A program made the position numbers and the translations under genes. Below the pieces are notes generated by a model. The model worked only from the letters and a program-made list of their open reading frames with translations. It was not told where the DNA came from and did not search any database. From positions 518,008 to 582,007 of IMG/VR virus record IMGVR_UViG_3300050122_000263: DNA of 64,000 nucleotides; one strand, written 5' to 3'. Shown here piece after piece: positions 34,965 to 63,354 of this stretch (position 1 is its first letter; each line of letters starts with the position of its first letter).

Positions 34965-35117
34965 TGCAGCTGTTTGCAACTTTCTTACGATCTCTCCACT
35001 ACAATTGGCTGATCAGTTCTCGCTTCTTTCGCTGTTGTCATAGAATTAGCACTATGATTATGACTGATATAAAGTTATATCAGTCAGATTAAAGTCGTAC
35101 TAGAAACAACCTAGATA

Positions 35118-41288: not shown

Positions 41289-43817
41289 CTAGTCAAATCG
41301 CTTCTTGTCGAACTTGACCAATAATATGTTGTGCTGCTTAATCCACTTGATGTCCTCAGAATCCTCAATTGGCACCACAACATTGGACAGCTTCTTGCCA
41401 ACTGCAAGTGTTGAGTTAGCTCCCTGAGTCACAATGATATCGCGCTCAGTGGTTAAGAACAGTCCTCTCGCCACGTCGAACTTCGTGACTTGCAAGCTTC
41501 TTACGTGGGGCTCATCGCATCTGGATATCTGAGGAGTGGGGCCAGGAACGAAGGGTATCTGAGATACAGGTGGAATTAAGGCTGGCATTGAAGGTGATGT
41601 GGATCTGATCTGAGGAATGAATGTTAGTAGGCCAGGTACAGGCCTGACATGAGCTGCGATCTCCAGTCCATTCTTATAGGCGAAGGCCAAATCGTCCTTG
41701 TCTAAGGGTTCAACATCCACGTCTACCAGCTTGCCTATCACACGTGGCTGATTGGGCTTGCTGTGTTCAACCAGTAGGTTGTGTTCCTCAGTCAGGAATA
41801 GACTATCTACGGGCTCGTATAATTGCACATCAACTGAGCCGGCTGGATGATCAACAGCGCCGTAACTGGGCTCAATCGGACGCAGAAAAGATAAGAATAG
41901 CTCACTGGCTTGCACGACATCCTCCTCACGCAGAGGCAGGATGGCATCTGTTTCTCCCTTACGTCCAATGACCTTGGGTCTATCATGGTTCATATGGACA
42001 ATCAGGTTGCCTGGCATCACAGTGAAGAGTTGAAAGGTTAAGTTGAAGGGGAAGAATGTCATGCCCTGTGCTGGCTCAGCCCGAACACCCAGGGGAACAG
42101 TATCGATACGTTGTGGATAATTTGCAGTGATATGATCCAAACAATACTGGCACATGTAAAAGTCGCCCTCATTCACCATGACTAAGTGAAAAGCTGGCTG
42201 GCCACACCGGGACTTACCGTCCTTGTTGCGAATATAAGTGCACAGCTTCATCTTGTTGAGCTCCCAGCCCACTGTAGGGCTGGAGGTGGGAAGAGAACTG
42301 GATGATGGTTGTGGCTTAGAAAGGATGCTTGAGGGGCTGAAAACTGGTTGCATGACTGGCGGTGGTGGCATAGTCATATTGGTGCTGATAAATCGCATGC
42401 GCTTCTCATGAATCTTACACAACCTTGCGTTGCGCAAAGAAGGCTTGTGGCAATATTCACCCTTCTTCATGCCTCGCGTGAATATGTGCTGGCATTTGTC
42501 TGTCGGACCCTGTGGAGTGTGTATCTTTGGAATAGATGTACTTGGGACAGGCACATTAGGAACAAATATGGTTGGCATTGACACATTTGGAACCGACATT
42601 CTTGGAATGGTCTTGCTAGCCTTCTCATCTTGCAGATCCTGTTTCACCGCTGCTTCTTGAGCTTGCTTGATTTCCTCATGAGGCTTGCACAGCTTGCTGT
42701 TGGCAGTGTGCGGTCTAGCACAGTACATACCTCTATAGGGTCCCTTCTGGAGAAGGTAACTGCAGCAATCCTTCAAAGGCTCTGCGACAGGGGCGGGGCG
42801 TTCTGCCGTCCATCCTCCTTTAGGAGCGGGTATTGGATGTACGAACTTAAGGCCTCCACCAGTACTTGGAATGGGTACGGTTGGTATGCCGAGTACTGGC
42901 GTAGATGCCGGTAGAGAAACAGGGGCGGGCTTGGGGATAGAATCCAAAATCTTGCAAGAGATTTGCTTCCCCTGCCGTTTGACATTCTTCATCTGATGCT
43001 TGGGACAATAGTCGATTCCAAGCATAGGGTTTTCATTGCAAGGAAATCCCATACGAGGTCCCTTCTCAAGCTTGAAGATACAACCCTTTGACTGATGAAC
43101 ATCACAGAAGATCCCACCTGCCACCGCATGGGCTTCGCAATATAGCCATTCACCCTCAAAATAACCGAGAGTAAAAGGACAGACTGCCGGTACTGCACTG
43201 ACCTTGGTGTCTGAGGCACCGGGTTGAACAGTCTCCGGCACAGGTGGTGCCTTCTGGCCCTCAATGGCAGTGACGAGTGCCATCTCTCTTTTCAACATCT
43301 GTCTTCCCAGCTCTGCGGCCTGAGCCTTGATCATCTTCCTCTGATGTCCAATGCAGTAATCTCTGCCTGGGAAACGGTCAGCCTCACAAGGAAATCCACA
43401 ACGAGGACCCTTCTCAAGCTTGAAGATACAACCCTTCGGGGTGTGAGCATCGCACCAAACTCCAACTTTCGCCGCGGGAGCTTGGCAACGTAACCATCTG
43501 CCATGCCCATCATTTCCACCGAGGATAAAGGGACATCCTGATGTTTCAACGGGCTTGATGTCAGAAGCAACAGGAATAGCTGGTTGAGCTGGTTGCTTCC
43601 AATTGTCCGTAGGGAGAGCAGGCAGAGCAGGAATCGCCATGACCTCGGCAGGCTTGATTTCGGCGGCAGGAATTGGTACAGGAATATCGTTGAACAGAGT
43701 CTCAATATGTTGGTCACAGTAGAGGGCGTAAGTGCCCTCGATGGGCTCACAGGAGGTGTTGCATTTCTTGCCCGTAGAGGGGCCAGAAGTTAGGATGAAT
43801 TGGCAGGACTTTTGCAT
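41289..43817 (-). CDS. Multi C-C-C-H zinc-finger repeat protein, paralog 2
   Basis: Same architecture as 38624; duplicated GCIFKLEKGPR.GFPC unit; start MQKSC at 43817. Confidence 0.75.
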   Translation of the reverse strand: MQKSCQFILTSGPSTGKKCNTSCEPIEGTYALYCDQHIETLFNDIPVPIPAAEIKPAEVMAIPALPALPTDNWKQPAQPAIPVASDIKPVETSGCPFILGGNDGHGRWLRCQAPAAKVGVWCDAHTPKGCIFKLEKGPRCGFPCEADRFPGRDYCIGHQRKMIKAQAAELGRQMLKREMALVTAIEGQKAPPVPETVQPGASDTKVSAVPAVCPFTLGYFEGEWLYCEAHAVAGGIFCDVHQSKGCIFKLEKGPRMGFPCNENPMLGIDYCPKHQMKNVKRQGKQISCKILDSIPKPAPVSLPASTPVLGIPTVPIPSTGGGLKFVHPIPAPKGGWTAERPAPVAEPLKDCCSYLLQKGPYRGMYCARPHTANSKLCKPHEEIKQAQEAAVKQDLQDEKASKTIPRMSVPNVSMPTIFVPNVPVPSTSIPKIHTPQGPTDKCQHIFTRGMKKGEYCHKPSLRNARLCKIHEKRMRFISTNMTMPPPPVMQPVFSPSSILSKPQPSSSSLPTSSPTVGWELNKMKLCTYIRNKDGKSRCGQPAFHLVMVNEGDFYMCQYCLDHITANYPQRIDTVPLGVRAEPAQGMTFFPFNLTFQLFTVMPGNLIVHMNHDRPKVIGRKGETDAILPLREEDVVQASELFLSFLRPIEPSYGAVDHPAGSVDVQLYEPVDSLFLTEEHNLLVEHSKPNQPRVIGKLVDVDVEPLDKDDLAFAYKNGLEIAAHVRPVPGLLTFIPQIRSTSPSMPALIPPVSQIPFVPGPTPQISRCDEPHVRSLQVTKFDVARGLFLTTERDIIVTQGANSTLAVGKKLSNVVVPIEDSEDIKWIKQHNILLVKFDKKRFD

Positions 43818-43977
43818 GTTTGATTGTTCGTGTTGATTTGGAGACAAACAGCGAGATAATTGAAATTTCACATTCCCCTTGCATCTGTTAAATTCGCCCA
43901 CTTAGATCATAATACAATTGAGTGTGAAGTTGTTTTGTGACAATCTCATAAACTTGAGACCAGGATCACAAGACTAG

Positions 43978-44038: not shown

Positions 44039-45610
44039 TTACGGTCTGGTGTAACCCTCAAAACGGGGAAAGGCCTTAATTTCTTTGACTGAGTAGGCTT
44101 GGGTAATAAAGGCAATCAGTCGCTCCACCCCCAGTCCGAAGCCGGCTGTATCTCCAGCACCGTACTCACGCAGGTCCATGTAGAAGCCATAGTCCCTATC
44201 AATGTCCGCGATGGAATGCATCTTAGCCACGAAGTCCAGGAAAAGTTGCTGTGTAGTACGGGGTGTATAAGCAGCCTTATAACCGTCCTTGAGGAAGGAT
44301 GCGAAATCTCCGGCATGGGCACAGAAGACGAAGAGCGCATCTCTGAGAAACTCGGTTTCCTCCTTCTCGATCAAGATCATAATGCGCTTCTTCAACTCAG
44401 AATCCAGTTGAAAGTCAGTGGGATGGGCCTTCTTGTCAATCACATCAAACAAGAGCTCCGCTGCGTCTCTGAGGATTTGACCCTCTAGTGCGCGGCGTAG
44501 TTCAACTGGATCAGAGACACGAGGACCTGAGCCCACGACCTCTCCAACTTTTGGCAATTCCACGTCAACTCCCAGCACACGAGAACGGTCTTCTGGGTCA
44601 CGGCGCATGTAGAAAGATTTGAACTCAAATGGGAACTTGCAGAGAAAGACGATTTGATCGAGCTTGTCGATGAGCTGACGTTCCTGGGCTTCTGGAATAT
44701 CATCACGTTCTCCGAAGGGCGTTCCATCTGTCTTGCTGATACCCATCTCTCCCAACTTAACAACAGCTTCCTTATGGGGCAGGATGAGAATACCTTTGCG
44801 ACGCAGCGCCGCGATATGATCCACTTTCTGGATATCAGCACAGGTCTCGATGATGCGATCAAACAGAATCTCCACGAACTGAGTCAGAAAGGTGATGTAT
44901 GATTCGAAGGTGGGGAAGCCAGGTCCCTCAAACTCTGCGTGATCAAAGGAGCTTAAATGGCGGCGTGTTTTGGAACGCTCAGCCCTGAAAGAGGGGGCAA
45001 TACAATAGCAACGCCCCACCGCCGGCACGGCAGCTTCCAGGTAGAACTGTGAGCTCTGAGTCAGATAGACTTGATCGCCCATATGATCAAAGGAGAAGAC
45101 AGAGGAGCCTCCTTCGCAAAGGGTCGAGCCATAGAGAGGAGGTGAGATCTCAGTGCAACCCAGCTTCTCAAAGGTAAAGCGCAGGGCTGAGAGAACACGA
45201 GCATAAAGCACGATGTGTCGTCTAGGCTCCTTGTGTCTGATCCAGAGAGCTCGCTCCTTCAGTTGAATGTCAATGCCCGATTCCTTTGAGACTCGGCTCC
45301 TGAAGTCATGGCGTGCAAGATTACAAGTCTTAATTTCTAAGCACTCCAGCTCGAAGCCTGTGGCTGTGGTGTGTGATGCTTCAACTCGTTTGACTCGGGC
45401 GCTCATAGCCAGATAGGTTTCAGGTGTGATGTCACCGTGTTCACTTGCGATCTTCACGTCGATGACCACCTGGATCTGATCCTGTGGCAGTGGCCCATCA
45501 CGTAGTGTGACGAAGATGAAGCGCTTCTTGTGGACAAGTCTGGTCGTCCATCCCTGAACGAAAATTGTAGTGTCAAGTTTGGTCTCGTCGATATCCTTCA
45601 ATGCGAGCAT
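44039..45610 (-). CDS. asnS: Asparaginyl-tRNA synthetase (class IIb, eukaryote-like)
   Basis: OB-fold with FVTLRDG; CEGGS; YLTQSSQFYLE; motif 2 SFRAERSKTRRHL; motif 3 GFGLGVER. Confidence 0.88.
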   Translation of the reverse strand: MLALKDIDETKLDTTIFVQGWTTRLVHKKRFIFVTLRDGPLPQDQIQVVIDVKIASEHGDITPETYLAMSARVKRVEASHTTATGFELECLEIKTCNLARHDFRSRVSKESGIDIQLKERALWIRHKEPRRHIVLYARVLSALRFTFEKLGCTEISPPLYGSTLCEGGSSVFSFDHMGDQVYLTQSSQFYLEAAVPAVGRCYCIAPSFRAERSKTRRHLSSFDHAEFEGPGFPTFESYITFLTQFVEILFDRIIETCADIQKVDHIAALRRKGILILPHKEAVVKLGEMGISKTDGTPFGERDDIPEAQERQLIDKLDQIVFLCKFPFEFKSFYMRRDPEDRSRVLGVDVELPKVGEVVGSGPRVSDPVELRRALEGQILRDAAELLFDVIDKKAHPTDFQLDSELKKRIMILIEKEETEFLRDALFVFCAHAGDFASFLKDGYKAAYTPRTTQQLFLDFVAKMHSIADIDRDYGFYMDLREYGAGDTAGFGLGVERLIAFITQAYSVKEIKAFPRFEGYTRP

Positions 45611-45760: not shown

Positions 45761-46591
45761 ATGTTAGAAGTACAGCAAGACCAAATCATCTCTGTATCTG
45801 TAGGCAAATATGACTGGAAGAATAAAATCTCAGCTTATATGCCAGGTTACACAAACATTCTCATTCACCCTGGCCAACCATATGCGGCACTCAGTCCCTA
45901 CGATCTCCGCAATGAGAAGGGTGAACTGCTGGAAAATTTGTGGCAGTTCGCGAAGTTATACTCCAGCGTGCCTGCTCAAGATCAGTGGAGCTACATAGCT
46001 GGATACAACGGAAAAGTTCAGATCTGGTCGCACCCGGCTGAAGTTCATATAAGCCGGGAGGAAGGCATAACACAGGCTTACTGGCAGTGGCGGGCCAAAG
46101 GCTTTGCCAACAAGTATGCAGTGCGCTGGCCAGTTGGGCAACAGCAGAGTCGCAATTGTTTAGGCAGTATCTGGCCAATAGTTGTAGATGACACCCTAAA
46201 AGATGATGGCCAACCAGCGCTGAAACGGCTAGATTATATTGCGGCTCGCAAGGCTATCTACTTCAAGTTGTATCGAGATATGCTAGATCCAGCCAAAAGT
46301 CCTCATAACCAGCTTGCCATCCAGCAAATGCAAGAACTGGCTGCTCGGGTAAGAGCAGGTGAGAAGTTACAGATTGTGGAAGTGGATGGTCCCAGTGCTG
46401 GGGAAACAGCACCCTATAATAAGGTGCTGGCGGGTAGGATCGGAGATGCTGGAGTGGCCAGTATGCCAGCTACACTGGAGAATCTCAGAGCGGCTCTCAA
46501 CAACCCGGACAAGCCTTTTGGTCACGGCTTTTCCATAGCCTGGTTACTACAAGAGATGCTTGGAGTGATCCCTACTGATACGTTAGAATAA
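45761..46591 (+). CDS. NADAR-like protein (candidate ADP-ribose/N-glycoside hydrolase)
   Basis: YAALSPY...ENLWQFAK matches the NADAR E-x3-Q-x2-K pattern; IVEVDGP; FGHG. Confidence 0.5.
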   Translation: MLEVQQDQIISVSVGKYDWKNKISAYMPGYTNILIHPGQPYAALSPYDLRNEKGELLENLWQFAKLYSSVPAQDQWSYIAGYNGKVQIWSHPAEVHISREEGITQAYWQWRAKGFANKYAVRWPVGQQQSRNCLGSIWPIVVDDTLKDDGQPALKRLDYIAARKAIYFKLYRDMLDPAKSPHNQLAIQQMQELAARVRAGEKLQIVEVDGPSAGETAPYNKVLAGRIGDAGVASMPATLENLRAALNNPDKPFGHGFSIAWLLQEMLGVIPTDTLE

Positions 46592-46604
46592 AGACCCACA
46601 CCTC

Positions 46605-46630
46605 AAAAAACATCTATATAGATGTTTTTT
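46605..46630. terminator. Perfect 26-bp palindrome between convergent genes
   Basis: aaaaaacatctat/atagatgtttttt. Confidence 0.75.
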
Positions 46631-46703
46631 CACAATGTTTCGATGGATAGCACTGACCAGATCCCCTCCCGTTGGATATCTTGGCACAATATCTTAGGAT
46701 AAC

Positions 46704-47546
46704 CTACTTAGTCTGCAACAACGTGCGGAGTTGCTCATAATTCATGCCAAGCTGGTAAGGATAGTAGTTAGCTCCAAGCATAACGCAAGCTTTCTCTTGA
46801 GTCAGTCTGAAAAGGACTTCCAGCACCAAGCGGGCAAAATCATCGATGTCTTGTTCCACTGTGCTTTCGGTTTGTCCTATAGGTACTCCCTCATGAAAGA
46901 CATCAAGCGGAATCACTGTGATTTTCTTACTCTTGCCTCTGGCACGGCCCTTCGGTACAGATACAGCAGTACAAGCATCGGCGAAATCGATGATATGAGC
47001 CGTTTCAGCTGCATCAATGATGATGTTCTCAAGACTGAGATCATTGTAGACCACACCACATTGATGCAGCTTCTCGATTTGATTCAAGATTTGCACCAGG
47101 ACAGGGCGGCTCCAGGCTCGGTCATGCTTAAGCTCTGCAGTTGCAATGTATTTACAGCCATCTGTAGCTGGGGAACTATTCTTGGCGTCTCTAGACTCCA
47201 GCCAGCGGTCCAAAGTCTGCCCCTCAATATACTGGAAAATATTCATCTCCAGCAGGTCTGGTATAAATGCCACCTCCTGATCTAGTTTGAGGGCCATAAT
47301 CATCTCTTCGTAGTTAGCAATTGTGGCTTTGACCTTATTCTCACCCACTAGGCTAAGCAATAGGCGTTCTGTATTGATATGTCCTGCAATCAGTGGGTAG
47401 AGTAGAGCATCAGCATTTCTCGACGCTACGGTCTCGATCTTAGCAACGGCTCTCACATCCTGGAAGACTCCTTCCAGGATAATGCGTCCGGTGTCGGACC
47501 AGGGGCACAAGAAGCGAACAAAGGTGAATTGCTGGATACCAGCCAT
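46704..47546 (-). CDS. Protein kinase-like protein
   Basis: AVAKI, FQYIEGQTL, LHQCGVVYNDLSLENII, IIDFA. Confidence 0.75.
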   Translation of the reverse strand: MAGIQQFTFVRFLCPWSDTGRIILEGVFQDVRAVAKIETVASRNADALLYPLIAGHINTERLLLSLVGENKVKATIANYEEMIMALKLDQEVAFIPDLLEMNIFQYIEGQTLDRWLESRDAKNSSPATDGCKYIATAELKHDRAWSRPVLVQILNQIEKLHQCGVVYNDLSLENIIIDAAETAHIIDFADACTAVSVPKGRARGKSKKITVIPLDVFHEGVPIGQTESTVEQDIDDFARLVLEVLFRLTQEKACVMLGANYYPYQLGMNYEQLRTLLQTK

Positions 47547-47835
47547 TTTTCCTTATTTTACCTTTCCTCTTTTCATTTAAATTAAATGAAATTATTTTTC
47601 CTGATATCAGCCCTACTATGGGGAAGCTCATTTAAATGAGATGGGTTGAGGGCTAACTGTGAGAACTGCGCTGTTAGGTCCCTAATGGCAGGGAACAGAG
47701 TAGCCGAGCCTTAATCCAGATGTTACGACTTGGGTTCCTATAGCTTAATGGGGATTTATCGTGAAATGATCGAGAGATGCTGACACAGTGTTCCAGCAAA
47801 TCGCTTGCATCAGAAGCTCTGTGAAATTTCCAATT

Positions 47836-49788
47836 ATGCATAAGGGTTTTCTCATCGACGAGTACTGCACAGCGCAGGGAGGGCAACTCTATGAACACCC
47901 TCAGAATGGGGTTTACTCTTGCACTCTCAATCAAACAGACATCCGCCGTAATGCTAATAAGTTTTATATCATACAAATTGTGCAGAGCGGAAGTAGCTAT
48001 TATCTATATGTTAGGTACGGAAGGGTCGGGGCAAAGGGCGTGACATCACAACAACCATACCACTCAGCGCAGATGGCTGCCAGTGACTTTGAAGGCAAAT
48101 TCCGAGAGAAGACAGGTAACCACTGGTATTCCCGTGAACAATTCCAAGCCAAGCCCAAGAAATATTTCCTGGCTAATATCAATTACGCCCAGGAGATGGC
48201 TGCAGTAGTCTTGCCACCACCTGCGGCTATGATACCATCTCAGCTGCCCAGGCCAGTGCAGGATCTTATAACTATGCTGTCAGATCGCAATATGATGCAA
48301 CAAGCCTTGGTTAATCTGGAGATTGATCTGACTAAGATGCCTCTGGGTAAGATTACTCAGCAACAGCTTGATATGGCTCGAGCTGTGTTGGATCAACTTC
48401 AACACCTTGTAGTACACAGGACGTTTCCAACCGTTGTGAGTGAGGTAGCGAGGCCTTCGTTTGCAGCTCCTGTAGCTGGCCTACAATTCGAGTTGGTGGA
48501 TGATACGCCAGCAGTTCAGAGCCCTGCCCTGCCTGTACCTGCGCCAGTCAGTCCAGTCCCAACTGTCTTACCCCAGGTTCCAGTTCAGACCCCTCCTGTC
48601 AATACGACAGGTTTTAGAGCCATCACCTTTCAGCCTGCTGCGCCTAGATCGACGGTGGCTCGGCCTGCCATGACAGGCCCTGTCTTCCAGCCCAACTCTG
48701 GCTTTACACCGTTGAACTTTCAACCAACGTTAAATGGTTCATTCAGACCAGTTCAGTCGACTTTCCAGCCTATCTTTGCCTCGGCAGCTCATGTGTTAAC
48801 TCCCACTTTCACCCCTGGTCCTATGACCCAACCAGCTGTACAGCTAGTGCTACAGGGCCCGACAACACTGAGCTCAGCTCACAGCACTTCAGGGGTTATT
48901 CCCTTGAGTGAAGGCCATCTAAATATGGAGCTGGTGAATCTCTCCTCCCGCTACTACACCTATGTGCCGGTCAACTGTGGTCGCAACATCCCACCTGTCA
49001 TCAACAATACAGCCATGATTGACAAGTGCCGCCAAGTATTGGATGATCTCAGCAATATCTCAGTTGGAGTCAAAATCATTGATCAGAGCCAAAGATCTAC
49101 CTCGAACCCGATAGACTCTGTCTACCAAGACATCAACACAAAGATTGAGCCTCTAGCCCGCAATTCTCAGATGTGGGCGGCTATCAACACTTATGTCACA
49201 AACAGTCACGGTAGAACACACAGTTGTAAGCTACAGGTGATGGAGATCTTCACCATTGAGCAGGCCGGTAAAAGGGCCAAGTTTGAGGCGTTCTCAAACC
49301 AAATTGGCAATCATACATTACTCTTCCACGGCACTCCCACGTCATGCGGAATCTCAATTATGAAGCGCGACTTCTATCTCAATCCCGAGGTACTTGGGGC
49401 TAGTATAACAGGCAAGATGTTTGGACTGGGATTATACTTTGCAAACTGTTCTTCCAAGAGCTTTGGCTATACTCGTGCAGAAACCACCGGAGGTATTGGT
49501 TGTATGTTCTTAGCCCAAGTGGCCTTGGGTACCTCATTGGACAAACTAGACAGTGATAGTGGTCTTAATAAATCAAAGCTGGATGCAGCAGGTTGTCACT
49601 CCACCAAAGGCATTGGTCGTTTGGCTCCAGCCTCATCTGTTGAAGTGGATGGAGTGAAAATACCACTCGGCGCTATCGCTGAGAATCCTGACGCTAGAGC
49701 ACTCAATTACGATGAGTTCATTATCTATCACGTGGATCAGCAGTTAATTCGCTTCCTGGTGCTGGTCAAAGATCTCAGCTCGCGTTGA
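47836..49788 (+). CDS. PARP: Poly(ADP-ribose) polymerase (WGR, regulatory and catalytic domains; PARP2/3-like layout)
   Basis: LNQTDI..NANKFY.IQ, YGRVG, MPLGK, LLFHGT, GKMFGLGLYFA..SSKS..Y, LNYDEFIIY; ATG at 47836. Confidence 0.92.
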   Translation: MHKGFLIDEYCTAQGGQLYEHPQNGVYSCTLNQTDIRRNANKFYIIQIVQSGSSYYLYVRYGRVGAKGVTSQQPYHSAQMAASDFEGKFREKTGNHWYSREQFQAKPKKYFLANINYAQEMAAVVLPPPAAMIPSQLPRPVQDLITMLSDRNMMQQALVNLEIDLTKMPLGKITQQQLDMARAVLDQLQHLVVHRTFPTVVSEVARPSFAAPVAGLQFELVDDTPAVQSPALPVPAPVSPVPTVLPQVPVQTPPVNTTGFRAITFQPAAPRSTVARPAMTGPVFQPNSGFTPLNFQPTLNGSFRPVQSTFQPIFASAAHVLTPTFTPGPMTQPAVQLVLQGPTTLSSAHSTSGVIPLSEGHLNMELVNLSSRYYTYVPVNCGRNIPPVINNTAMIDKCRQVLDDLSNISVGVKIIDQSQRSTSNPIDSVYQDINTKIEPLARNSQMWAAINTYVTNSHGRTHSCKLQVMEIFTIEQAGKRAKFEAFSNQIGNHTLLFHGTPTSCGISIMKRDFYLNPEVLGASITGKMFGLGLYFANCSSKSFGYTRAETTGGIGCMFLAQVALGTSLDKLDSDSGLNKSKLDAAGCHSTKGIGRLAPASSVEVDGVKIPLGAIAENPDARALNYDEFIIYHVDQQLIRFLVLVKDLSSR

Positions 49789-49875
49789 AAGTTGGACAGT
49801 ACTGAGCTCAGAGAATTAAAAACAGAGTCTTAAGATTGATGTGAGAGTTCTCACATCAAAGTATGTAAAGCCACC

Positions 49876-50598
49876 ATGCAAAACATCACCTTCCAAGTTG
49901 TTGAGGAGGATCAGGCAAGCACAGAAGAAGTAGTCGAAACGCTTGCCGAGCAAGATCTGCCTGATGAGACTCCTGCCAATGAAGCGGATTACTGTATGAT
50001 TTGCTATGAGAAATACGACCTTCCAGTTACCCAACCTTGTTGCCAGAAGAAGTTCTGCTTCCTTTGCTTGAAGGGAGCTTATGACTTCAATAATAACTGT
50101 CCTCACTGCTGTCAAACCAATATCCTCAAGCTGGACCACCTGGTTGAGGATAGTATCGAGCAATTCATTTCAAGCCAACTGGACAAACCTGTTTGGCTTT
50201 ATGCCTCAGCCAGCAAGGATGGTTATTGGTTGTATGGTTCTCGAATTGCTCCTCTACTTGAAACGGCTTTCCAGAAATACATGGCTACTCACCCCACCTC
50301 ATCTTCGGAAGATTCAGGAGAGGACTCTGAAGAAAATCCAGGGGAGAAAGATGACTCTGTTGAGCTGCCAGACCAAGACGCCGTTAATAGTGAGGCAGAA
50401 GTGGAGCCCGCACTTGATTCCATCACGTTTCAGATAACTGGCAAATGGTATCGGGTCAACTTCAAAGAGATGACTCAACGCAATGGCAATCGACATCGGG
50501 CAGTCAGGCGGGTTATCCTGCAACCCAAGCATATCGGAGATGACGGCCTGAATATCAAGGGTGTACAGGGCCTCTTCATCAAAGAGAAGAAGGAATAG
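49876..50598 (+). CDS. RING-WWE E3 ubiquitin ligase, RNF146/Iduna-like
   Basis: CMIC...PVTQPCC..FCFLCLKG...CPHC; WWE-like WLY...GYWLY...LETAF...I.GKWY.VNFKEMTQ...R.VRR; terminal KGVQGL. Confidence 0.8.
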   Translation: MQNITFQVVEEDQASTEEVVETLAEQDLPDETPANEADYCMICYEKYDLPVTQPCCQKKFCFLCLKGAYDFNNNCPHCCQTNILKLDHLVEDSIEQFISSQLDKPVWLYASASKDGYWLYGSRIAPLLETAFQKYMATHPTSSSEDSGEDSEENPGEKDDSVELPDQDAVNSEAEVEPALDSITFQITGKWYRVNFKEMTQRNGNRHRAVRRVILQPKHIGDDGLNIKGVQGLFIKEKKE

Positions 50599-50846
50599 CA
50601 TCATGTAAAAACAGTCCATTATAAACGCAAAATAACTATACCAGTTATTTTCAAACTTATCTCACCACACATTGCATCAGAAAGCTTAATCTTTAACCTG
50701 AAACATAAACAGTTTTCCCTCAATTCACTGAAGTAATAATGGGAGAGATACAAAAAATCGATTATCCGTGTGAAAACGGATAATTGTAATATCCAGCAAC
50801 TTTGTGCTTTGTAAAGGGTCAGAGCTCAACTACCAACGTATAGCTA

Positions 50847-53507
50847 ATGGAAGAGCCAGCCCTGCCAGATTTTAAGTTGATCTTGCCCTACTTTGAGTTA
50901 ATCCTACCGGGCAAAGCAGCCTCTCAGGCTAAGGTACTTAAGGCTCAGATCGACTTCGTGCAACGTGGTGGTAAGAAACTTTTCAGTTTCACCATTCTAC
51001 CTGCCGATCTGATAGAGGATCTGACCGGAGATTTTGTGGCCCAACAGGCCCTCAGGAACTATCTGATCTATCTGTTTCAGGGTGGAGAAATACCGCCTGA
51101 ACGGGAACGCAGAGCTCTACTGACAGCCTGGCAAATCTCACGCTTGCTGGATTGCAGCGAGGAGATGTGTCAACGGACCGCAAACTTGGCTGAGGCTTAT
51201 CTGCAACATGCCGGAGCTGAAGATCTACCAGCCTTAGAGCTGATCTTACAGGTTCTGTCTTTTGCACCAACATTGGTGGCTCGCTTCCTCAAGGACATGG
51301 CCAATCGAATCTACGAGACAGATAGTTTCACCAACCAGCTGGCCCATTACTTCCGCGAGATCATTCAACATAACGAGCAAATGGCTTACGCTCTCCAGCC
51401 ACATGCTTATCCCACCGTGCACGCGGAACGAATTGATCGAATTAGCCCCACTTTCTTCTTGTTAGATCCCCTCCGCTCTTCTGCCCTAATACCTGACTAT
51501 ATGGACGCTCAACCAGTGGCTGCTATTCCAGAAGGAAGTTTCATCGTTGCCCCAACAGCGGTCAAGCTACCAGATATTCAACTCTTTTTGCAACGTGCAG
51601 TCCAGATCTTCCCAGATTTACTACAGTTTAATGAGGAAATCAGTGCTCAGATTCGCCAACAATTTCCAGGTCAAAATGTGGGCTTCTTGATCGCAGATAT
51701 GATCATGCCGATTTGTCTGGATGAGTGGTTATTTCAGCGCTTCAGTGACAAAGCCAATATCGAAATTCACGCTTACGGTCCCACCATTGAAATCAGGGAG
51801 AAGATATTCACTCTGATTAATACATGGTTTCGAGTTAAGTTCGGTTTTGCAGGGCGACGATTTGATGTGGAACCTGAATATATGATTAGACAGGGAAGAG
51901 CTGGATTAGTCTTCAGTCGTGCGAATCCCAACCTTCCAGCTCTCATCATAAGGATCGTGCCTTCAGGTGCCTCAACTGCTATGCAACAACTCAGTCAACA
52001 ACGTGTCTCTCATCTACAGGTCGGTTATGATATGTATAAGGGGTTAGTTTGTACTCCACTCTTCTCTCTTTACTTCAGGCAGCGAGTCTCAGTCATTGAT
52101 CACTATGCTATTACCTTCGAGGAGCTAGTGACCACCCTTTACTATGGCTTTACTCTGAGTATTATCGCTCCATTCGCTCACCTGCTGGTATATTTAAAGG
52201 CGAATAAGTTCAAACTGACTCACCTTTATTACGAGGTGATGGGAATGCCAGCCCTTATCAAGGGTGCTCCTCAACTTGTTGTGATGAAAACGCCGCCTGT
52301 AGGAACATTGTGGCCTCCCATTATCCAACCCGCTGATGCAACTGTTAATCGCCATGCCAACTGGTTAGCCGGCCAATCTGGCGATTACGCTATTATCGGC
52401 AGCGATGCTATAGTTGTTTCTAAACATCTCGACCGTTGGGACACCATCTCACAGTTCGATGCTCTTGAGAGCATAAGCTTTGACCTGGATATAAATCGTT
52501 TGATCGAACCAGGGGAACCGACAACTATTGAGGGTGTCACTAATACACCTCAAGCTTTCCATTATGATCCTGAGCGCCCTCTCGCAAAGACTCTTCTTGA
52601 GATGAAAGTTGGATCTCTTATGCTCGGTAATTACTCTTTGGGTAGTAGCTTCCTGCTACGTCAGTGCCGTTTCAAGCGTTTGCCACAATATCTCATGCCT
52701 CGAGAGGTACGGGTTATGAATAAGAACTACAAACTCATACATGAATATGTATGGGATGTTGGAGTTACATTACCTGAAAGAACAGTTCCACCCATGCAGA
52801 TAGATACTGTAGCTGCCTGGGGTCCACAAGGACTTGAGCTGCAGCACGATGTTGTGCGATATGAAGGGACTGGCCCAGTTGCTGGGCCGGGCAGAAATCC
52901 GGTCTCCGTCTTTGAGCGGGTCAATATGCCGAACGATCCTACTAATGTCATGTTGCTCAACTCAACGACACTTTTCCCAATCAATGTGGTCGGAGTTCTA
53001 CAGATTCACTCACAGGGTGGTAGAAGGCCTGTTTCTATCTCTGAGATGCGGGACCCGCTTCCTTTGACTGAGGAACAGATTAACGCTCTACCTGTGATTA
53101 AGCTCGATCAGCTCTTTGACTTTTTGCTTGTAGCTGATCCTGAGTTCCACGCTCAAGTGCTTGCCTACAGGGAGGTTAATCAGGGAGGAGCTATTGGGTA
53201 TTGGCAGGCAAGAAATGTTAATGTGATGGGAAAGACATTTCGACATGAACGTGTACCACAAGATATACCCAGACTATATGAAGCGGCTCTGGCTAAATAC
53301 AGACCCATCACTTTACAACAAGCTCTCTATGTACCTCAGTTTGTACGCGTTGATCTCGATGTCACCATTGGTAGCTGGCTCTTCATCGATGAAGGTGACT
53401 GGCTTATGCCCTTCTCAGATCTCTTCAAGTATGAGTTCAACTGCACCATTAAGAGGAGTACAGCCTCAGATTTCCGAATTGGCAGAGGATACAAGATATT
53501 TCCTTAG
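50847..53507 (+). CDS. ~900-aa SKP1/BTB-like plus NTase-like family member 2
   Basis: Colinear similarity to 20714, 53622 and 56409. Confidence 0.75.
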   Translation: MEEPALPDFKLILPYFELILPGKAASQAKVLKAQIDFVQRGGKKLFSFTILPADLIEDLTGDFVAQQALRNYLIYLFQGGEIPPERERRALLTAWQISRLLDCSEEMCQRTANLAEAYLQHAGAEDLPALELILQVLSFAPTLVARFLKDMANRIYETDSFTNQLAHYFREIIQHNEQMAYALQPHAYPTVHAERIDRISPTFFLLDPLRSSALIPDYMDAQPVAAIPEGSFIVAPTAVKLPDIQLFLQRAVQIFPDLLQFNEEISAQIRQQFPGQNVGFLIADMIMPICLDEWLFQRFSDKANIEIHAYGPTIEIREKIFTLINTWFRVKFGFAGRRFDVEPEYMIRQGRAGLVFSRANPNLPALIIRIVPSGASTAMQQLSQQRVSHLQVGYDMYKGLVCTPLFSLYFRQRVSVIDHYAITFEELVTTLYYGFTLSIIAPFAHLLVYLKANKFKLTHLYYEVMGMPALIKGAPQLVVMKTPPVGTLWPPIIQPADATVNRHANWLAGQSGDYAIIGSDAIVVSKHLDRWDTISQFDALESISFDLDINRLIEPGEPTTIEGVTNTPQAFHYDPERPLAKTLLEMKVGSLMLGNYSLGSSFLLRQCRFKRLPQYLMPREVRVMNKNYKLIHEYVWDVGVTLPERTVPPMQIDTVAAWGPQGLELQHDVVRYEGTGPVAGPGRNPVSVFERVNMPNDPTNVMLLNSTTLFPINVVGVLQIHSQGGRRPVSISEMRDPLPLTEEQINALPVIKLDQLFDFLLVADPEFHAQVLAYREVNQGGAIGYWQARNVNVMGKTFRHERVPQDIPRLYEAALAKYRPITLQQALYVPQFVRVDLDVTIGSWLFIDEGDWLMPFSDLFKYEFNCTIKRSTASDFRIGRGYKIFP

Positions 53508-53535
53508 ACTACCCCTAAGATGGCCGTAGAAATTA

Positions 53536-53557
53536 AAAACATCTTCCAAGATGTTTT
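53536..53557 (+). terminator. 3'-end hairpin
   Basis: aaaacatctt-cc-aagatgtttt. Confidence 0.75.
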
Positions 53558-53621
53558 GAGATCCATTGTGTCTGAAATATCCAATTTCGTTAGACAACAA
53601 CTCCACCGCTTGTAAAGAGTC

Positions 53622-56282
53622 ATGCAGGCTCCAGAGCTGCCAGAGTTTAAGTTAATCTTGCCCTACTTCGAGCTGGTGATGCCAGGGGAAGCTGCCATCC
53701 AAGCCAGGGTACTTCAGGCTCACATTAACTTCATTCAACGCGGTGGAGCCCCTAATTATTTCTTCTCCATTCTCCCTGAGGACCTAACAGAGAATTTAGC
53801 TGGAGACTTCGTAGCCCAGCAGGCGCTTAGGAACTACCTAACTTATCTATTTCTGGGCGGTGAACTTCCACTCGAACGAGATAGAAGAGCCCTGCTAGCG
53901 GCCTGGGAGATCTCGCGTTTACTGGATTGCACGGCAGATCTGTGTCTCAGGACAGCGCGCCTGGCAGAAGCATATCTAGAACATGCTGGTGCTGATGATC
54001 TGCCTGCCATAGAGCTGATACTACAGATTCTACCCCACGTATCCACTATTACAGCGCGCTTTTTCAAACGGCTAGCTAACCGCCTGTACGAGACGGACAG
54101 TTTTACCAACCAGTTAGCCCATTACTTCAAGCAGATTATTAATGCTAATGAACAATTTGCTTATGCACTGCAACCACACGGCTACCCAACTGTACGCTCC
54201 GAACGGATCGATCAGTTTAGCCCAGCACTTTATCTGATCGATCCATTACGTTCCTCAACCGCTATCCCTGACTATATGGACGCTCAACCAGCAGCTGCTA
54301 TTCCAGAAGGCAGTTTCACTGTGGCTCCAGGCCCTGTGGTGCTACCTAGCATTAACACTTTCCTGCAGAGAATTACCCAAATATTCCCCATGTTGCTGCA
54401 GTTTAATGAGGAAGTGGGCGCCGAGGTTCGCCGGCAGTTCGATGAACAAACTGCAGGATTTTTGCTAGGAGGCATGCTTATACCAATTTGTCTGGACGAG
54501 TGGTTATTTCAACGCTTCAACCGCACAACAACCATTGAATTTTACATTTACGGTCCAACGGCCGAAATTCGACGAGAAATATTCAACATGGTTTTGGGAT
54601 GGTTTGAGGCAGCCTTTGGTCTTCCTGCGAATGAGCCTGGGGTTGAGCCCCAGTATCACGTTTTCAACCGCATGAACAGTTTAACCATAATACGTGCGAA
54701 TCCTGACCTTCCAGCTCTAGCCATCAGGATTGTCCCTTCAGATGCCCAAACTGCTATGAAACAACTTAAATCACAGCGTTTCTCTCATCTGCAGGTCGGT
54801 TATGATGTGCACAGAGGATTAATTTGTACACCACTTTTTGCACTCTATTTCAGAAAGAGAGTTTCTGTTATCGATTCGTACGCTTTCACCCAAGATGAGC
54901 TGATTCAATGTCTTTACACTGGTTTCACTGTCAAGCTAATTGCTCCATTTGCTCACGTACTGGTTTACATGGTGGAGGGCCAGTCTCACGGTTATGTACT
55001 TATGAGTGAATACATGGAAACACCAGCCTTGATTAAGGGAGATCCTCAACTTGTCATCAAACGAGTTATTCTACGTCAAGCAGGTGTTTTAGTGCCACTA
55101 CTTCTAGCAGATTCACCAGGTAACCGCTTTCTCGGTAATGACATTGCAGGGGAGAAAGGGTTGTACACATTCATCGGTAGTGATAGAAGGGCAAGGGAGA
55201 TTGTTGTAAATCATTGGAACACGAATCTGCAACGTGGAAACCAATCCCGTATCAGCTTTGCTTTGAATTTGGATCAAAACATTAAGCCCGAATCTAGGAC
55301 TACTATTGAAGGCTTAACTAATACACCAACTGGTTTCACTTATTCATTTTTTTCAGGAGGCTCTCTACTTCAGGTTGAGCCCGGTTCCATTACGGGCGAT
55401 AACTCTAAATTAAGCAGCTATTTCTTACTACGTCATTGTCGTTTCCACCGTTCTCCACGCTATCTTATCTCACGCGATGTGGAAAGAACAGTGGAGAACT
55501 ATCGTCGTAAGCTTCTCAATCTCGACGATCTAGGAGAATTTATGACTATCCCTGCTCAAACTGTCCCTTCTATAGAGTTCCTACCAGAACAGGATGCCTT
55601 TGAAGAGGTGCTCCAACCTGTTTTACGTTATCCTGTTGACCCTATTACCGGAGTAGCAGCAGTGCCTGGAGGATTTGGCGCTAATCCGTATGTAGTGCAA
55701 CCTACAGACCCGACTAATGTTATGTTGCTGGGTGAAGAGGCAGTTTTCCCTATCACTGTGGTGGGAGTACTGCAACTCTGGTCACTCAATGGAAAGGAGT
55801 TCGTGCCCATCTCTCAGATTAGGGACCCACTACCTCTGACTGAGGAACAGATCAACTCACTGTCCACCATCCGGCCTGACCAGATCTATGATCTATTGTT
55901 GGCAGCTGATCCTGAATTCTACGCCCAGGTCTTAGCCTACCGGGAGATCAACCGAGAAGGGGCCATTGATCGCTGGCGTGAGAGGCAACGCCAGCCACAT
56001 ATAGCACATTTTCAGTATCAACCATTCCCTCAGGATGATGTACCAGCCTTCTTTGAGAGAGCCGTTGTCAAGTGGAGGGACATCACCTTCCGACAAGCTC
56101 TCCAGATGCCTCAGTTTGTCCGCGTCCAGCTGGACGTAATCATTGATAAATGGATATTCATTGATGAGGCCAATTGGCTGATGGAGTTTAAGGAACTTTT
56201 CCTACACCAGTTCAACTGCTCTATCAAGAAAGATGAGAGGCTCGAGTTCCGAGTTAAGAGGGGATACAAAGTCTTTCCCTAG
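53622..56282 (+). CDS. ~900-aa family member 3
   Basis: Closest to 50847 (LP.FKLILPYFEL, YETDSFTNQLAHYF). Confidence 0.75.
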   Translation: MQAPELPEFKLILPYFELVMPGEAAIQARVLQAHINFIQRGGAPNYFFSILPEDLTENLAGDFVAQQALRNYLTYLFLGGELPLERDRRALLAAWEISRLLDCTADLCLRTARLAEAYLEHAGADDLPAIELILQILPHVSTITARFFKRLANRLYETDSFTNQLAHYFKQIINANEQFAYALQPHGYPTVRSERIDQFSPALYLIDPLRSSTAIPDYMDAQPAAAIPEGSFTVAPGPVVLPSINTFLQRITQIFPMLLQFNEEVGAEVRRQFDEQTAGFLLGGMLIPICLDEWLFQRFNRTTTIEFYIYGPTAEIRREIFNMVLGWFEAAFGLPANEPGVEPQYHVFNRMNSLTIIRANPDLPALAIRIVPSDAQTAMKQLKSQRFSHLQVGYDVHRGLICTPLFALYFRKRVSVIDSYAFTQDELIQCLYTGFTVKLIAPFAHVLVYMVEGQSHGYVLMSEYMETPALIKGDPQLVIKRVILRQAGVLVPLLLADSPGNRFLGNDIAGEKGLYTFIGSDRRAREIVVNHWNTNLQRGNQSRISFALNLDQNIKPESRTTIEGLTNTPTGFTYSFFSGGSLLQVEPGSITGDNSKLSSYFLLRHCRFHRSPRYLISRDVERTVENYRRKLLNLDDLGEFMTIPAQTVPSIEFLPEQDAFEEVLQPVLRYPVDPITGVAAVPGGFGANPYVVQPTDPTNVMLLGEEAVFPITVVGVLQLWSLNGKEFVPISQIRDPLPLTEEQINSLSTIRPDQIYDLLLAADPEFYAQVLAYREINREGAIDRWRERQRQPHIAHFQYQPFPQDDVPAFFERAVVKWRDITFRQALQMPQFVRVQLDVIIDKWIFIDEANWLMEFKELFLHQFNCSIKKDERLEFRVKRGYKVFP

Positions 56283-56309
56283 ACCCCTATCTGGTGCCGT
56301 CTTGAAATT

Positions 56310-56333
56310 AAAAACATCTCAGCAGATGTTTCG
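56310..56333 (+). terminator. 3'-end hairpin, identical to 61477..61500
   Basis: aaaaacatctcagcagatgtttcg. Confidence 0.7.
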
Positions 56334-56408
56334 CTCGCTGTTCTGATTCTTCTGCCAGTTCTGCCATATAGCTAGAAATTTCTCAAGCTCTATGCCATAC
56401 AACAAAAG

Positions 56409-59321: not shown

Positions 59322-63354
<4,033 letters not shown>

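What the first reader, a model, noticed from the sequence alone, without database searches (positions are those of the whole stretch)
45761..50598. Candidate viral ADP-ribose writer/reader/eraser module: PARP + RNF146-like RING-WWE ligase + NADAR-like hydrolase + kinase
Seen: a PARP with a WGR domain and complete H-Y-E triad is followed 87 nt later, on the same strand, by a RING-WWE protein; upstream lie a divergently transcribed kinase and a gene with a NADAR-type E-x3-Q-x2-K motif. Known: H-Y-E PARPs can make poly(ADP-ribose) and WGR domains sense nucleic acid or DNA breaks; RNF146/Iduna binds iso-ADP-ribose through WWE and ubiquitinates PARylated proteins; some NADARs remove ADP-ribose from guanine. 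Inference: the virus may carry a clustered, self-contained PAR-dependent ubiquitination circuit that tags host or viral proteins for degradation, with its own reversal enzyme. I am not aware of this described as a linked viral system, but I cannot search.
Basis: partly seen in the sequence, partly recalled or inferred. Interest (0 to 1): 0.88.

Follow-up and report, generated by a model that had tools for sequence, protein, structure and literature searches.

The report
Giant-virus PARP and RNF146-like ligase pair
A giant virus from peat carries a DNA-break-type poly(ADP-ribose) polymerase gene next to a small RNF146-like ubiquitin ligase gene, and the same two genes sit side by side in dozens of otherwise unrelated giant-virus-like contigs, so these viruses probably carry their own 'mark with PAR, then ubiquitinate' circuit; the neighbouring 'NADAR-like' and kinase genes are not part of it.

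Summary
The PARP (47836-49788, +) has WGR, helical and catalytic domains and the H-Y-E triad. The gene 87 nt downstream (49876-50598, +) is a RING-WWE protein. Its best solved relative by sequence and by predicted fold is RNF146, and it keeps the residues that bind iso-ADP-ribose. RING-WWE genes were found in metagenomes without reference to PARP. Of 25 such unique loci with at least 500 bp on both sides, 17 have a WGR-PARP next to them. The 26 unique linked loci are mostly head-to-head, fall into many deeply diverged PARP groups, and share no other neighbour. The four-gene writer/reader/eraser/kinase module is not supported. ORF1 (45761-46591) belongs to a widespread uncharacterised giant-virus family with only a faint DUF6939 match. 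Pfam, a profile comparison and a fold search gave no NADAR match. Neither ORF1 nor the kinase-like gene occurs in any other locus fetched (116 loci, 1.06 Mb). No macrodomain or PARG gene was found in the window. The window's RING is atypical: one zinc-ligand His and the usual Arg after the last Cys are replaced. I found no published description.

The parts
47836..49788 (+). WGR-type PARP gene, 650 aa from the ATG. An in-frame GTG at 47788 would give 666 aa.
   Evidence: Pfam WGR, PARP_reg and PARP. PDB PARP1 1e-74, PARP2 1e-67, PARP3 5e-29. Called as 650 aa in public assemblies.
47914..48144 (+). WGR domain (residues 27-103).
   Evidence: Pfam PF05406, 9e-22. NKFYIIQ motif conserved in viral PARPs.
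48238..48411 (+). First part of the helical (PARP_reg) domain, up to the insert.
   Evidence: Pfam PF02877 split into two stretches. Alignment to PARP1 4dqy stops and resumes at the same PARP1 residue.
48412..48906 (+). 165-aa low-complexity insert (P29 V21 T20 A17) in a loop of the helical domain.
   Evidence: Absent from four other viral PARPs. Composition.
49174..49770 (+). ADP-ribosyltransferase catalytic domain with H498, Y534 and E627.
   Evidence: Pfam PF00644, 4e-39. Triad positions. H and Y kept in 22 of 22 linked viral PARPs, E in 21 of 22; the exception is cut by a contig end.
49836..49859 (.). Perfect 11-bp-stem palindrome 48 nt after the PARP stop and 17 nt before the RING-WWE ATG. 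It may mark the PARP mRNA 3' end.
   Evidence: the repeat finder I6. Sequence. The function is inferred.
49876..50598 (+). RNF146-like RING-WWE gene, 240 aa.
49993..50112 (+). Variant RING (residues 40-79). C40, C43, C56, C61, C64, C75 and C78 are present. The canonical His ligand is Lys58. Extra Cys55, His77 and Cys79 are unique to this copy.
   Evidence: Column counts and the RING alignment of 22 linked proteins. AF2 pLDDT about 91 across this stretch.
50188..50571 (+). WWE domain (residues 105-232), split by an acidic insert at about residues 139-181 (nt 50290-50418). Y109, W118, Y192, Q201, R208 and K228 sit at the RNF146 iso-ADP-ribose-binding positions.
   Evidence: HMMER alignment to 4qpl. 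Family alignment. Conservation counts. Fold matches to 4qpl and 3v3l.
50629..50651 (.). 9-bp-stem palindrome 31 nt after the RING-WWE stop.
   Evidence: the repeat finder I11.
45761..46591 (+). ORF1: a neighbour, not part of the conserved pair. It belongs to an uncharacterised family conserved in giant viruses, with a faint DUF6939 match. The motifs LSPY, ENxWQFxK, EVDGP and FGHG are conserved.
46704..47546 (-). Small protein-kinase-like gene: a neighbour, not part of the conserved pair.
   Evidence: Pkinase 6e-7, below the cut-off. Partial weak matches to Bud32, KdkA and lanthionine-synthetase kinase models. No homologue in 116 other loci.
46605..46630 (.). Perfect 13-bp palindrome between the convergent ORF1 and kinase-like genes.
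   Evidence: the repeat finder I2.

Best explanation
The real unit is a two-gene cassette that is widespread in giant viruses (Nucleocytoviricota-like contigs). One gene is a PARP with the domain layout of PARP2 (WGR, helical domain, catalytic domain) and no zinc fingers or BRCT. The other is a minimal RNF146-like E3 made of a RING and a WWE domain and nothing else. Proposed mechanism, all of it inferred. The WGR domain senses DNA nicks or breaks in replicating viral DNA or host DNA. That relieves autoinhibition by the helical domain, and the H-Y-E enzyme builds poly(ADP-ribose) on itself and on nearby proteins. The WWE domain of the partner binds the iso-ADP-ribose unit, which exists only inside PAR chains. 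The RING then recruits a host E2 and ubiquitinates the PARylated proteins, either for removal by the proteasome or to turn over the auto-modified PARP itself. What is shown here is the domain content, the conserved catalytic and ligand-binding residues, and the conserved gene adjacency. In the window the pair is in a rare tandem order (PARP first) and the RING has a rewired zinc site. ORF1 and the kinase-like gene are bystanders.
For: Domains and residues:
- PARP domains and triad.
- Of the solved PARPs, PARP1 and PARP2 match far better than the mono-transferase PARP3.
- RNF146 is the best solved relative of the RING-WWE protein by sequence and by fold (4qpl_A, E 6.5e-9, both domains aligned).
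- The Tyr that PMC11269756 says gives RNF146 its iso-ADP-ribose specificity (Tyr107) is Tyr in 21 of 22 viral proteins. The other binding positions are also kept: Q 21/22, R 22/22, K 20/22.

Linkage:
- All 4 IMG/VR RING-WWE loci have a WGR-PARP within 1.5 kb.
- An independent metagenome scan for RING-WWE gave 51 unique loci with a short ORF. Of the 25 with at least 500 bp on both sides, 17 have a PARP; so do 11 of 16 with at least 1.5 kb.
- Among 26 unique linked loci, 19 are divergent, most with 8-131 nt between the start codons. Four are tandem with RING-WWE first, two convergent, and one (the window) tandem with PARP first.
- Across 22 linked loci, only PARP and RING-WWE are shared neighbours.
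- The linked PARPs fall into 13 groups at 50% identity, with a median pairwise identity of 36%. PARP and RING-WWE divergences correlate (Spearman 0.58).
Against: - No biochemistry was done. H-Y-E is necessary but not sufficient for poly activity.
- The window's RING is the only one of 22 with the His zinc ligand replaced (Lys58) and with Cys in place of the Arg that follows the last Cys. It could be a weak or dead ligase, and Pfam RING models score below their cut-offs.
- 16 of 23 distinct IMG/VR viral PARPs have no RING-WWE within the flanks fetched (up to 10 kb; some contigs end sooner). These include the four PARPs closest to the window's. The pairing is therefore frequent but not obligatory, and its history needs at least 4-5 gains or losses.
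- No viral E2, ubiquitin or PAR eraser was found in the window.
- No RNA data were available.
- Some metagenome contigs may be cellular rather than viral.
Confidence: 0.62

Rival explanations
1. The four genes form a self-contained writer (PARP), reader-effector (RING-WWE), eraser (NADAR-like ORF1) and kinase module.
For: The four genes are contiguous in the window. ORF1 carries a nearly invariant E-x3-Q-x2-K motif, preceded by an LSPY motif that resembles the NADAR FSNF...EHYFQAQK arrangement. The protein atlas places ORF1 near DUF6939 clusters, some of whose members also match NADAR-DarT1.
Against: - ORF1 has no NADAR match in Pfam, and DUF6939 scores only E 0.12. Only 2 of 35 family members reach DUF6939 at 0.01.
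- hhalign against a YbiA-type NADAR profile gives probability 0.3%.
- Foldseek of a pLDDT-92 model against the PDB finds nothing at E<=1.
- The ORF1 HMM hits none of the 113 PARP or RING-WWE loci.
- tblastn with ORF1 and with the kinase finds nothing in 116 loci totalling 1.06 Mb, apart from ORF1's own relative L007.
- Four ORF1-homologue contexts contain no PARP, WWE or macrodomain gene.
Confidence: 0.07
2. In this particular virus the RING-WWE protein is a PAR reader without ligase activity. It would act as a decoy or scaffold that binds PAR made by the viral or host PARP, for example shielding PAR or competing with host RNF146.
For: This copy alone has His4 replaced by Lys58 and the Arg after the last Cys replaced by Cys79. 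Its RING models score below the Pfam cut-offs, whereas the copies in L015 and L017 pass. Its gene order is also atypical.
Against: Seven of the eight canonical ligand positions are kept. The loss of His coincides with three new potential ligands (Cys55, His77, Cys79), which looks like compensation. AF2 models the RING with pLDDT about 91, and the whole protein superposes on RNF146 RING-WWE. The conserved LCxK motif (K66) is kept.
Confidence: 0.18
3. The adjacency has no functional meaning. It would be chance, or leftover synteny from one recent ancestor or from a single capture of a host gene block.
For: The pair is absent around 16 of 23 IMG/VR viral PARPs. The loci are not phylogenetically independent samples. 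No collection of eukaryotic genomes was available, so a host origin of the pair cannot be examined.
Against: - The linked PARPs form 13 groups below 50% identity, and contig GC ranges from 24% to 56%.
- Four different gene arrangements occur.
- No other gene is shared around the pair.
- 64-69% of adequately flanked RING-WWE loci have PARP as a neighbour. For one given gene in a genome of hundreds of genes, about 1-2% would be expected (my estimate).
Confidence: 0.05

Closest known systems
Animal PAR-dependent ubiquitination: RNF146 (Iduna) acting on targets of tankyrase or PARP1
   Same: A RING followed by a WWE domain. RNF146 is the best match by sequence and fold. The Tyr107-type determinant of iso-ADP-ribose specificity and the other binding residues are conserved (PMC11269756). 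It is paired functionally with an H-Y-E PARP.
   Different: The viral proteins are minimal (160-260 aa) and end a few residues after the WWE domain, so they lack the long RNF146 C-terminal tail; from memory, that tail carries the tankyrase-binding motifs. The partner is a WGR-type PARP, not an ankyrin-repeat tankyrase. The two genes are physically adjacent. Many viral copies have an acidic insert inside the WWE domain. The window copy has a rewired RING.
PARP2-type DNA-break-activated PARPs (WGR, helical domain, catalytic domain)
   Same: Same three-domain order, H-Y-E triad and strong sequence similarity (PARP1 1e-74, PARP2 1e-67).
   Different: No zinc fingers or BRCT as in PARP1. A 165-aa low-complexity insert lies in a loop of the helical domain and is found only in this virus among the five PARPs aligned. 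It is encoded by a virus.
Human PARP9-DTX3L head-to-head gene pair with a shared bidirectional promoter (from memory, not tested here)
   Same: A PARP-family gene and a RING E3 gene are transcribed divergently from a short shared region and work together. 19 of the 26 viral pairs are divergent, most with 8-131 nt between the starts.
   Different: DTX3L is a Deltex-type RING-DTC ligase and PARP9 is a macrodomain PARP with little activity of its own. The protein families differ and there is no sequence relationship to the viral pair beyond the domain superfamilies.
NADAR / DUF6939 superfamily (YbiA, DarT1-associated NADAR), for ORF1
   Same: A short motif resemblance: LSPY ... ENxWQFxK in ORF1 against FSNF ... 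EHYFQAQK in YbiA. The atlas feature search and its model-to-model comparison point to DUF6939 clusters, some of which overlap NADAR-DarT1.
   Different: No significant HMM, profile-profile or PDB fold match. ORF1 is about 100 aa longer, with its own invariant EVDGP and FGHG motifs. It shows no genomic link to ADP-ribosyl systems.

Membership tests
PARP1/2-type poly(ADP-ribose) polymerase | WGR domain N-terminal to the catalytic region | tested here: met
   PF05406, 9e-22, above the cut-off.
PARP1/2-type poly(ADP-ribose) polymerase | Helical regulatory domain (PARP_reg) | tested here: met
   PF02877, 8e-31. It is split by a 165-aa insert at a loop, and both halves align to PARP1.
PARP1/2-type poly(ADP-ribose) polymerase | ART fold with the H-Y-E triad | tested here: met
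   PF00644, 4e-39. H498, Y534 and E627 align to the PARP1 triad.
PARP1/2-type poly(ADP-ribose) polymerase | Makes polymers, and is activated by DNA breaks | not testable with these tools
   Needs an enzyme assay. The only indirect hints are closer similarity to PARP1 and PARP2 than to PARP3 and a partner whose WWE domain keeps the poly-specific Tyr.
RNF146-like PAR-dependent E3 ligase | RING followed by WWE in one small protein, superposable on RNF146 RING-WWE | tested here: met
   Foldseek top hit 4qpl_A, E 6.5e-9, TM 0.79 normalised by the target, 207 alignment columns. phmmer top hit 4qpl.
RNF146-like PAR-dependent E3 ligase | Eight canonical C3HC4 zinc ligands | tested here: inconclusive
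   Seven of eight are present and the His ligand is Lys58. Extra Cys55, His77 and Cys79 are unique to this copy. The RING models score below their Pfam cut-offs. The other 21 linked viral copies have the His.
RNF146-like PAR-dependent E3 ligase | Iso-ADP-ribose-binding residues of the WWE domain (RNF146 Y107, W114, Y144, Q153, R163, K175) | tested here: met
   The window has Y109, W118, Y192, Q201, R208 and K228. The role of Tyr107 is taken from PMC11269756. The K175 equivalence rests on the family alignment plus my memory of the RNF146 sequence.
RNF146-like PAR-dependent E3 ligase | C-terminal tail with tankyrase-binding motifs | tested here: not met
   The protein ends 8 residues after the conserved KGxxGL of the WWE domain, so there is no tail. 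That the motifs lie in the RNF146 tail is from memory.
RNF146-like PAR-dependent E3 ligase | PAR-stimulated ubiquitin ligase activity | not testable with these tools
   Needs a biochemical assay.
NADAR (PF08719) / NADAR-DarT1 | Significant match to a NADAR-family profile | tested here: not met
   No Pfam NADAR match at E<=10. hhalign of the ORF1 family against a 24-sequence YbiA-type profile gives probability 0.3%. As a positive control, YbiA itself scores 1.5e-38.
NADAR (PF08719) / NADAR-DarT1 | NADAR fold | tested here: not met
   The AF2 model (pLDDT 91.8) has no PDB match at E<=1. This result assumes the PDB copy holds NADAR structures such as YbiA; one search lists a PDB chain of YbiA. 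In BFVD only uncharacterised giant-virus proteins match. The atlas model-to-model search gives DUF6939 at TM 0.77 normalised by the matched cluster's length, so a remote relationship is not excluded.
NADAR (PF08719) / NADAR-DarT1 | E-x3-Q-x2-K helix motif | tested here: met
   E58, Q62 and K65 are nearly invariant in 35 homologues. A motif alone is weak evidence.
Eukaryotic-type protein kinase (gene 46704-47546) | Pkinase profile above the cut-off, with catalytic Lys, HRD-type Asp...Asn and DFG Asp | tested here: inconclusive
   29.5 bits against a cut-off of 31.7, with only the catalytic loop matched. AVAK at residue 33, YNDLSLEN at 167 and IDFA at 186 are present.
Conserved gene cassette (operational definition: adjacency kept across diverged genomes) | PARP and RING-WWE adjacent in diverged relatives without other conserved neighbours | tested here: met
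Conserved gene cassette (operational definition: adjacency kept across diverged genomes) | ORF1 and the kinase-like gene travel with the pair | tested here: not met
   There are no hits in any other PARP or RING-WWE locus.

The most novel reading that the evidence does not exclude
Many giant viruses encode an autonomous PAR-dependent ubiquitination system: a break-sensing PARP and a minimal RNF146-type ligase, usually driven from one short bidirectional promoter region. They would use it in the virus factory or host nucleus to mark host (or viral) proteins near DNA ends with PAR and destroy them. The pair may also be evolutionarily linked to the origin or spread of RNF146-type signalling in eukaryotes.
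Probability: 0.35. Interest if true: 0.8.

Novelty: new variant of a known kind. Interest (0 to 1): 0.66.

Why it matters
PAR-dependent ubiquitination is known from animal cells, where it controls Wnt signalling and the DNA-damage response and is a drug target. It would add a new class of virus-encoded post-translational machinery. It would provide very small natural RNF146-like ligases (160-240 aa) and compact PARPs for structural and mechanistic work. It would also open the question of what these viruses degrade during infection. In addition, the result corrects the tempting four-gene 'writer/reader/eraser' reading.

Tried and rejected
- A word-index homologue search with the RING-WWE protein found only the protein itself. 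The exhaustive search was needed.
- A single-protein scan of IMG/VR with the PARP found only the same virus.
- Contexts of the three best RING-WWE homologues were too short to be useful, although one 1-kb contig did show a PARP N-terminus next door.
- ORF1 as NADAR was tested in several ways: Pfam at E<=10, PHROGs, NCBIfam, PDB by sequence (single protein and profile), Foldseek against PDB, and hhalign against YbiA alone and against a YbiA-family profile. All were negative or faint. The profile hits to de novo TIM barrels are short repeated matches that I dismiss as chance.
- L054 looked like a PARP-RING-WWE fusion. It is a rearranged or chimeric ORF: the truncated ART is joined to the RING and the rest of the ART lies upstream. 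I do not count it as a Rosetta-stone fusion.
- I looked for an eraser, E2 or ubiquitin gene in the window. Pfam scans of most ORFs of at least 150 aa gave none.
- For expression evidence, no RNA run was listed.
- The literature searches found no description of the viral pair, and DUF6939 appears in no paper in the library.
- The PARP tree did not place the linked loci in one clade, so a single-origin story is not shown.

Full report
**What is in the window**

The region holds four densely packed genes.
- ORF1: 45761-46591, + strand, 276 aa.
- A kinase-like gene: 46704-47546, - strand, 280 aa.
- A PARP: 47836-49788, + strand, 650 aa from the first ATG. An upstream in-frame GTG at 47788 gives the 666-aa ORF that the ORF list reports.
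- A RING-WWE gene: 49876-50598, + strand, 240 aa.

The window comes from a large virus assembled repeatedly from peat metagenomes. Identical PARP and RING-WWE genes lie on IMG/VR contigs of 391 and 582 kb, and the RING-WWE protein is on record on a contig of 620 kb. Other genes in the window fit a giant virus: an asparaginyl-tRNA synthetase, an ERG4/ERG24 sterol reductase, F-box and collagen-repeat proteins, and many ORFs with no family.

**The PARP**

Pfam finds WGR (9e-22), PARP_reg (8e-31) and the catalytic domain (4e-39). Among solved structures, PARP1 (1e-74) and PARP2 (1e-67) match far better than PARP3 (5e-29). H498, Y534 and E627 align with the PARP1 H-Y-E triad. There are no zinc fingers or BRCT domain, so the architecture is that of PARP2.

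The helical domain is interrupted by a 165-residue insert rich in P, V, T and A (residues 193-357). The alignment to PARP1 stops and resumes at the same PARP1 residue, and four other viral PARPs lack the insert. The insert sits at a loop, and similar proline-rich linkers occur in a neighbouring ORF. I therefore read it as a tolerated coding insertion.

**The RING-WWE protein**

By sequence, the best solved relative is the RNF146 RING-WWE construct 4qpl (7e-7). An AlphaFold model built on 27 homologues has mean pLDDT 80, and above 90 in both folded domains. Its top fold hit is 4qpl_A (E 6.5e-9, TM 0.79 normalised by the target), with both domains aligned. Next come the RNF146 WWE domain, then the TRIP12 and HUWE1 WWE domains.

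Mapping the printed alignment onto RNF146 numbering gives these equivalences:
- Y107 -> Y109
- W114 -> W118
- Y144 -> Y192
- Q153 -> Q201
- R163 -> R208
- K175 -> K228

PMC11269756 attributes the preference of RNF146 for iso-ADP-ribose, the unit found only inside PAR chains, to Tyr107 and the basic loop beside it, and notes that HUWE1 and TRIP12 have Trp at that position. The viral family has Tyr there in 21 of 22 proteins.

The WWE domain carries an acidic insert of about 45 residues, at the place where many homologues also have one.

The RING in this copy is atypical. Of 22 linked viral proteins, it alone has the His zinc ligand replaced (Lys58). It alone has an extra Cys55, a His77 and a Cys79. 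Cys79 takes the place of the Arg that usually follows the last Cys. That looks like a rewired zinc site, but it could also mean reduced ligase activity.

**Is the linkage real?**

An exhaustive profile-free search found 231 relatives of the RING-WWE protein. A scan of IMG/VR with an alignment of them returned four loci. All four have a WGR-PARP_reg-PARP gene within 1.5 kb.

I then scanned JGI metagenome contigs for RING-WWE genes, a search that does not depend on PARP. It gave 80 loci, 74 of them unique.
- The 23 loci with long ORFs (over 290 aa, several at high GC) look like cellular RNF146-type genes. Only one of these has a PARP, and that one is the rearranged locus L054.
- Among the 51 unique loci with a short ORF, PARP is present in 17 of the 25 with at least 500 bp on both sides, in 11 of the 16 with at least 1.5 kb, and in 7 of the 11 with at least 3 kb.
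- The PARP is usually the immediate neighbour.

Pooling both collections gives 26 unique linked loci:
- 19 divergent, most with only 8-131 nt between the two start codons;
- 4 tandem with RING-WWE first;
- 2 convergent;
- 1 tandem with PARP first, which is the window.

Clustering every ORF of 22 linked loci shows that PARP and RING-WWE are the only families shared across them. All other shared neighbours are confined to sets of close relatives. The linked PARPs fall into 13 groups at 50% identity, with a median pairwise identity of 36%, on contigs of 24-56% GC. PARP and RING-WWE divergences are correlated (Spearman 0.58), as expected if the two are inherited together. All 22 linked PARPs keep H and Y. 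E is kept in 21; the exception is cut by a contig end.

The reverse survey is less absolute. Of 23 distinct viral PARPs in IMG/VR, 7 have a RING-WWE within 10 kb, and the four PARPs closest to the window's do not. Some of these contigs are short. On the PARP tree the linked state needs at least 4-5 changes. The pairing is therefore frequent and old, but it has been repeatedly lost, separated or re-formed.

**The other two genes**

ORF1 belongs to a well-conserved family: 44 homologues, with invariant EVDGP and FGHG motifs and a nearly invariant LSPY...ENxWQFxK. Its model is confident (pLDDT 91.8).

Evidence on the NADAR idea:
- In the viral structure library the model matches only uncharacterised proteins, from Solivirus, Edafosvirus, Marseillevirus LCMAC103, Bodo saltans virus, Megavirus and others.
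- It matches nothing in the PDB at E<=1.
- Pfam gives only DUF6939 at E 0.12.
- A profile comparison with YbiA-type NADAR gives probability 0.3%.
- The protein atlas places it beside DUF6939 clusters, some of which overlap the NADAR-DarT1 model. With the motif, this leaves a remote NADAR-superfamily relationship possible but unproven.

By context, ORF1 is not tied to ADP-ribosylation. Its HMM hits none of the 113 PARP or RING-WWE loci, and four homologue neighbourhoods contain nothing relevant.

The kinase-like gene scores just below the Pkinase cut-off but keeps the catalytic Lys, Asp...Asn and DFx motifs. It too has no relative in any other locus.

Pfam scans of most other ORFs of at least 150 aa in the window gave no macrodomain, PARG, ARH, Nudix, E2 or ubiquitin gene.

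**Transcription**

Perfect palindromes follow each gene: 46605-46630 between the convergent ORF1 and kinase-like genes, 49836-49859 after PARP, and 50629-50651 after RING-WWE. From memory, hairpins mark mRNA 3' ends in mimivirus-like viruses. If the same holds here, PARP and RING-WWE are separate transcripts rather than an operon. No RNA run was listed for this sequence, so this is inference only.

**Mechanism and verdict**

The best-supported reading is a two-gene viral cassette for PAR-dependent ubiquitination. It consists of a break-sensing, PARP2-like writer and a minimal RNF146-like reader-effector, usually co-regulated from a short divergent intergenic region.

The domains, the residues and the conserved adjacency are shown. 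DNA-break activation, polymer formation, PAR binding, ligase activity and the identity of the substrates are inferred from what is established for PARP1/2 and RNF146.

The closest known system is the animal RNF146-tankyrase/PARP1 pathway. The viral version differs in three ways: its partner is a WGR-type PARP rather than a tankyrase, it lacks the RNF146 tail, and the two genes are adjacent. The head-to-head layout recalls the human PARP9-DTX3L pair (from memory).

Full-text searches found no description of a giant-virus PARP with a linked RING-WWE ligase. I rate it a new variant of a known kind.

Noticed in passing
window 49993-50112: The window's RING is the only one of 22 linked viral RING-WWE proteins that lacks the His zinc ligand (Lys58). 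It alone has extra Cys55, His77 and Cys79, and Cys79 replaces the usual Arg after the last Cys. This may be a rewired zinc site or a weakened ligase.
   Followed up: partly
window 48412-48906: A 165-aa P/V/T/A-rich insert lies in a loop of the PARP helical (autoinhibitory) domain. It is absent from four other viral PARPs. L017's PARP has a different PT-rich repeat between the WGR and helical domains.
   Followed up: partly
window 46605-46630, 49836-49859, 50629-50651: Perfect palindromes of 13, 11 and 9 bp sit just downstream of the ORF1/kinase, PARP and RING-WWE genes. They may be mRNA 3'-end hairpins of the kind described for mimivirus-like viruses.
   Followed up: no
L038 11008-13094: A viral PARP gene is split right after the catalytic His (LLFHGT) by an insert of about 2.1 kb. 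The insert carries a 418-aa ORF that looks like TnpB/OrfB and a 190-aa ORF that looks like a serine recombinase, so it appears to be an IS607-type element. These readings are from inspecting the sequences; no family search was run.
   Followed up: partly
L054 3-1697: One ORF joins WGR, the helical domain and the first third of the ART domain in frame to a RING-WWE, while the rest of the ART lies upstream. It is a rearrangement or an assembly chimera, not a clean fusion.
   Followed up: partly
L015 8581-9921; L016 7681-8028 (also L114, L125): Genes are wedged between the pair in some viruses. L015 has a PP2C phosphatase with a SAP-like (Rho_N) domain. L016, L114 and L125 have an AlkB-like 2OG-Fe(II) oxygenase fragment. 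Both hint at a DNA-damage context.
   Followed up: no
window 50847-59126: Three tandem paralogous ORFs of 886, 886 and 905 aa lie directly downstream of the RING-WWE gene. The first has no Pfam match, and neither of the other two matched an ADP-ribose- or ubiquitin-related family.
   Followed up: no
window 33456-34979, 35949-37400, 44039-45610, 59322-63354: These ORFs are an ERG4/ERG24 sterol reductase, an F-box protein, an asparaginyl-tRNA synthetase and two collagen-repeat proteins. This is typical giant-virus cargo.
   Followed up: no
L007 7298-7945 and 10001-10768: The closest relative of ORF1 (46% identity, on a 481-kb contig) has a second ORF1 paralogue 2 kb upstream. There is no PARP or WWE gene within 10 kb.
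   Followed up: partly
window 41289-43901: An 870-aa ORF with repeated Cys/His-rich modules (CxFxLxxGP...C...C...H) separated by proline-rich linkers has no Pfam match.
   Followed up: no
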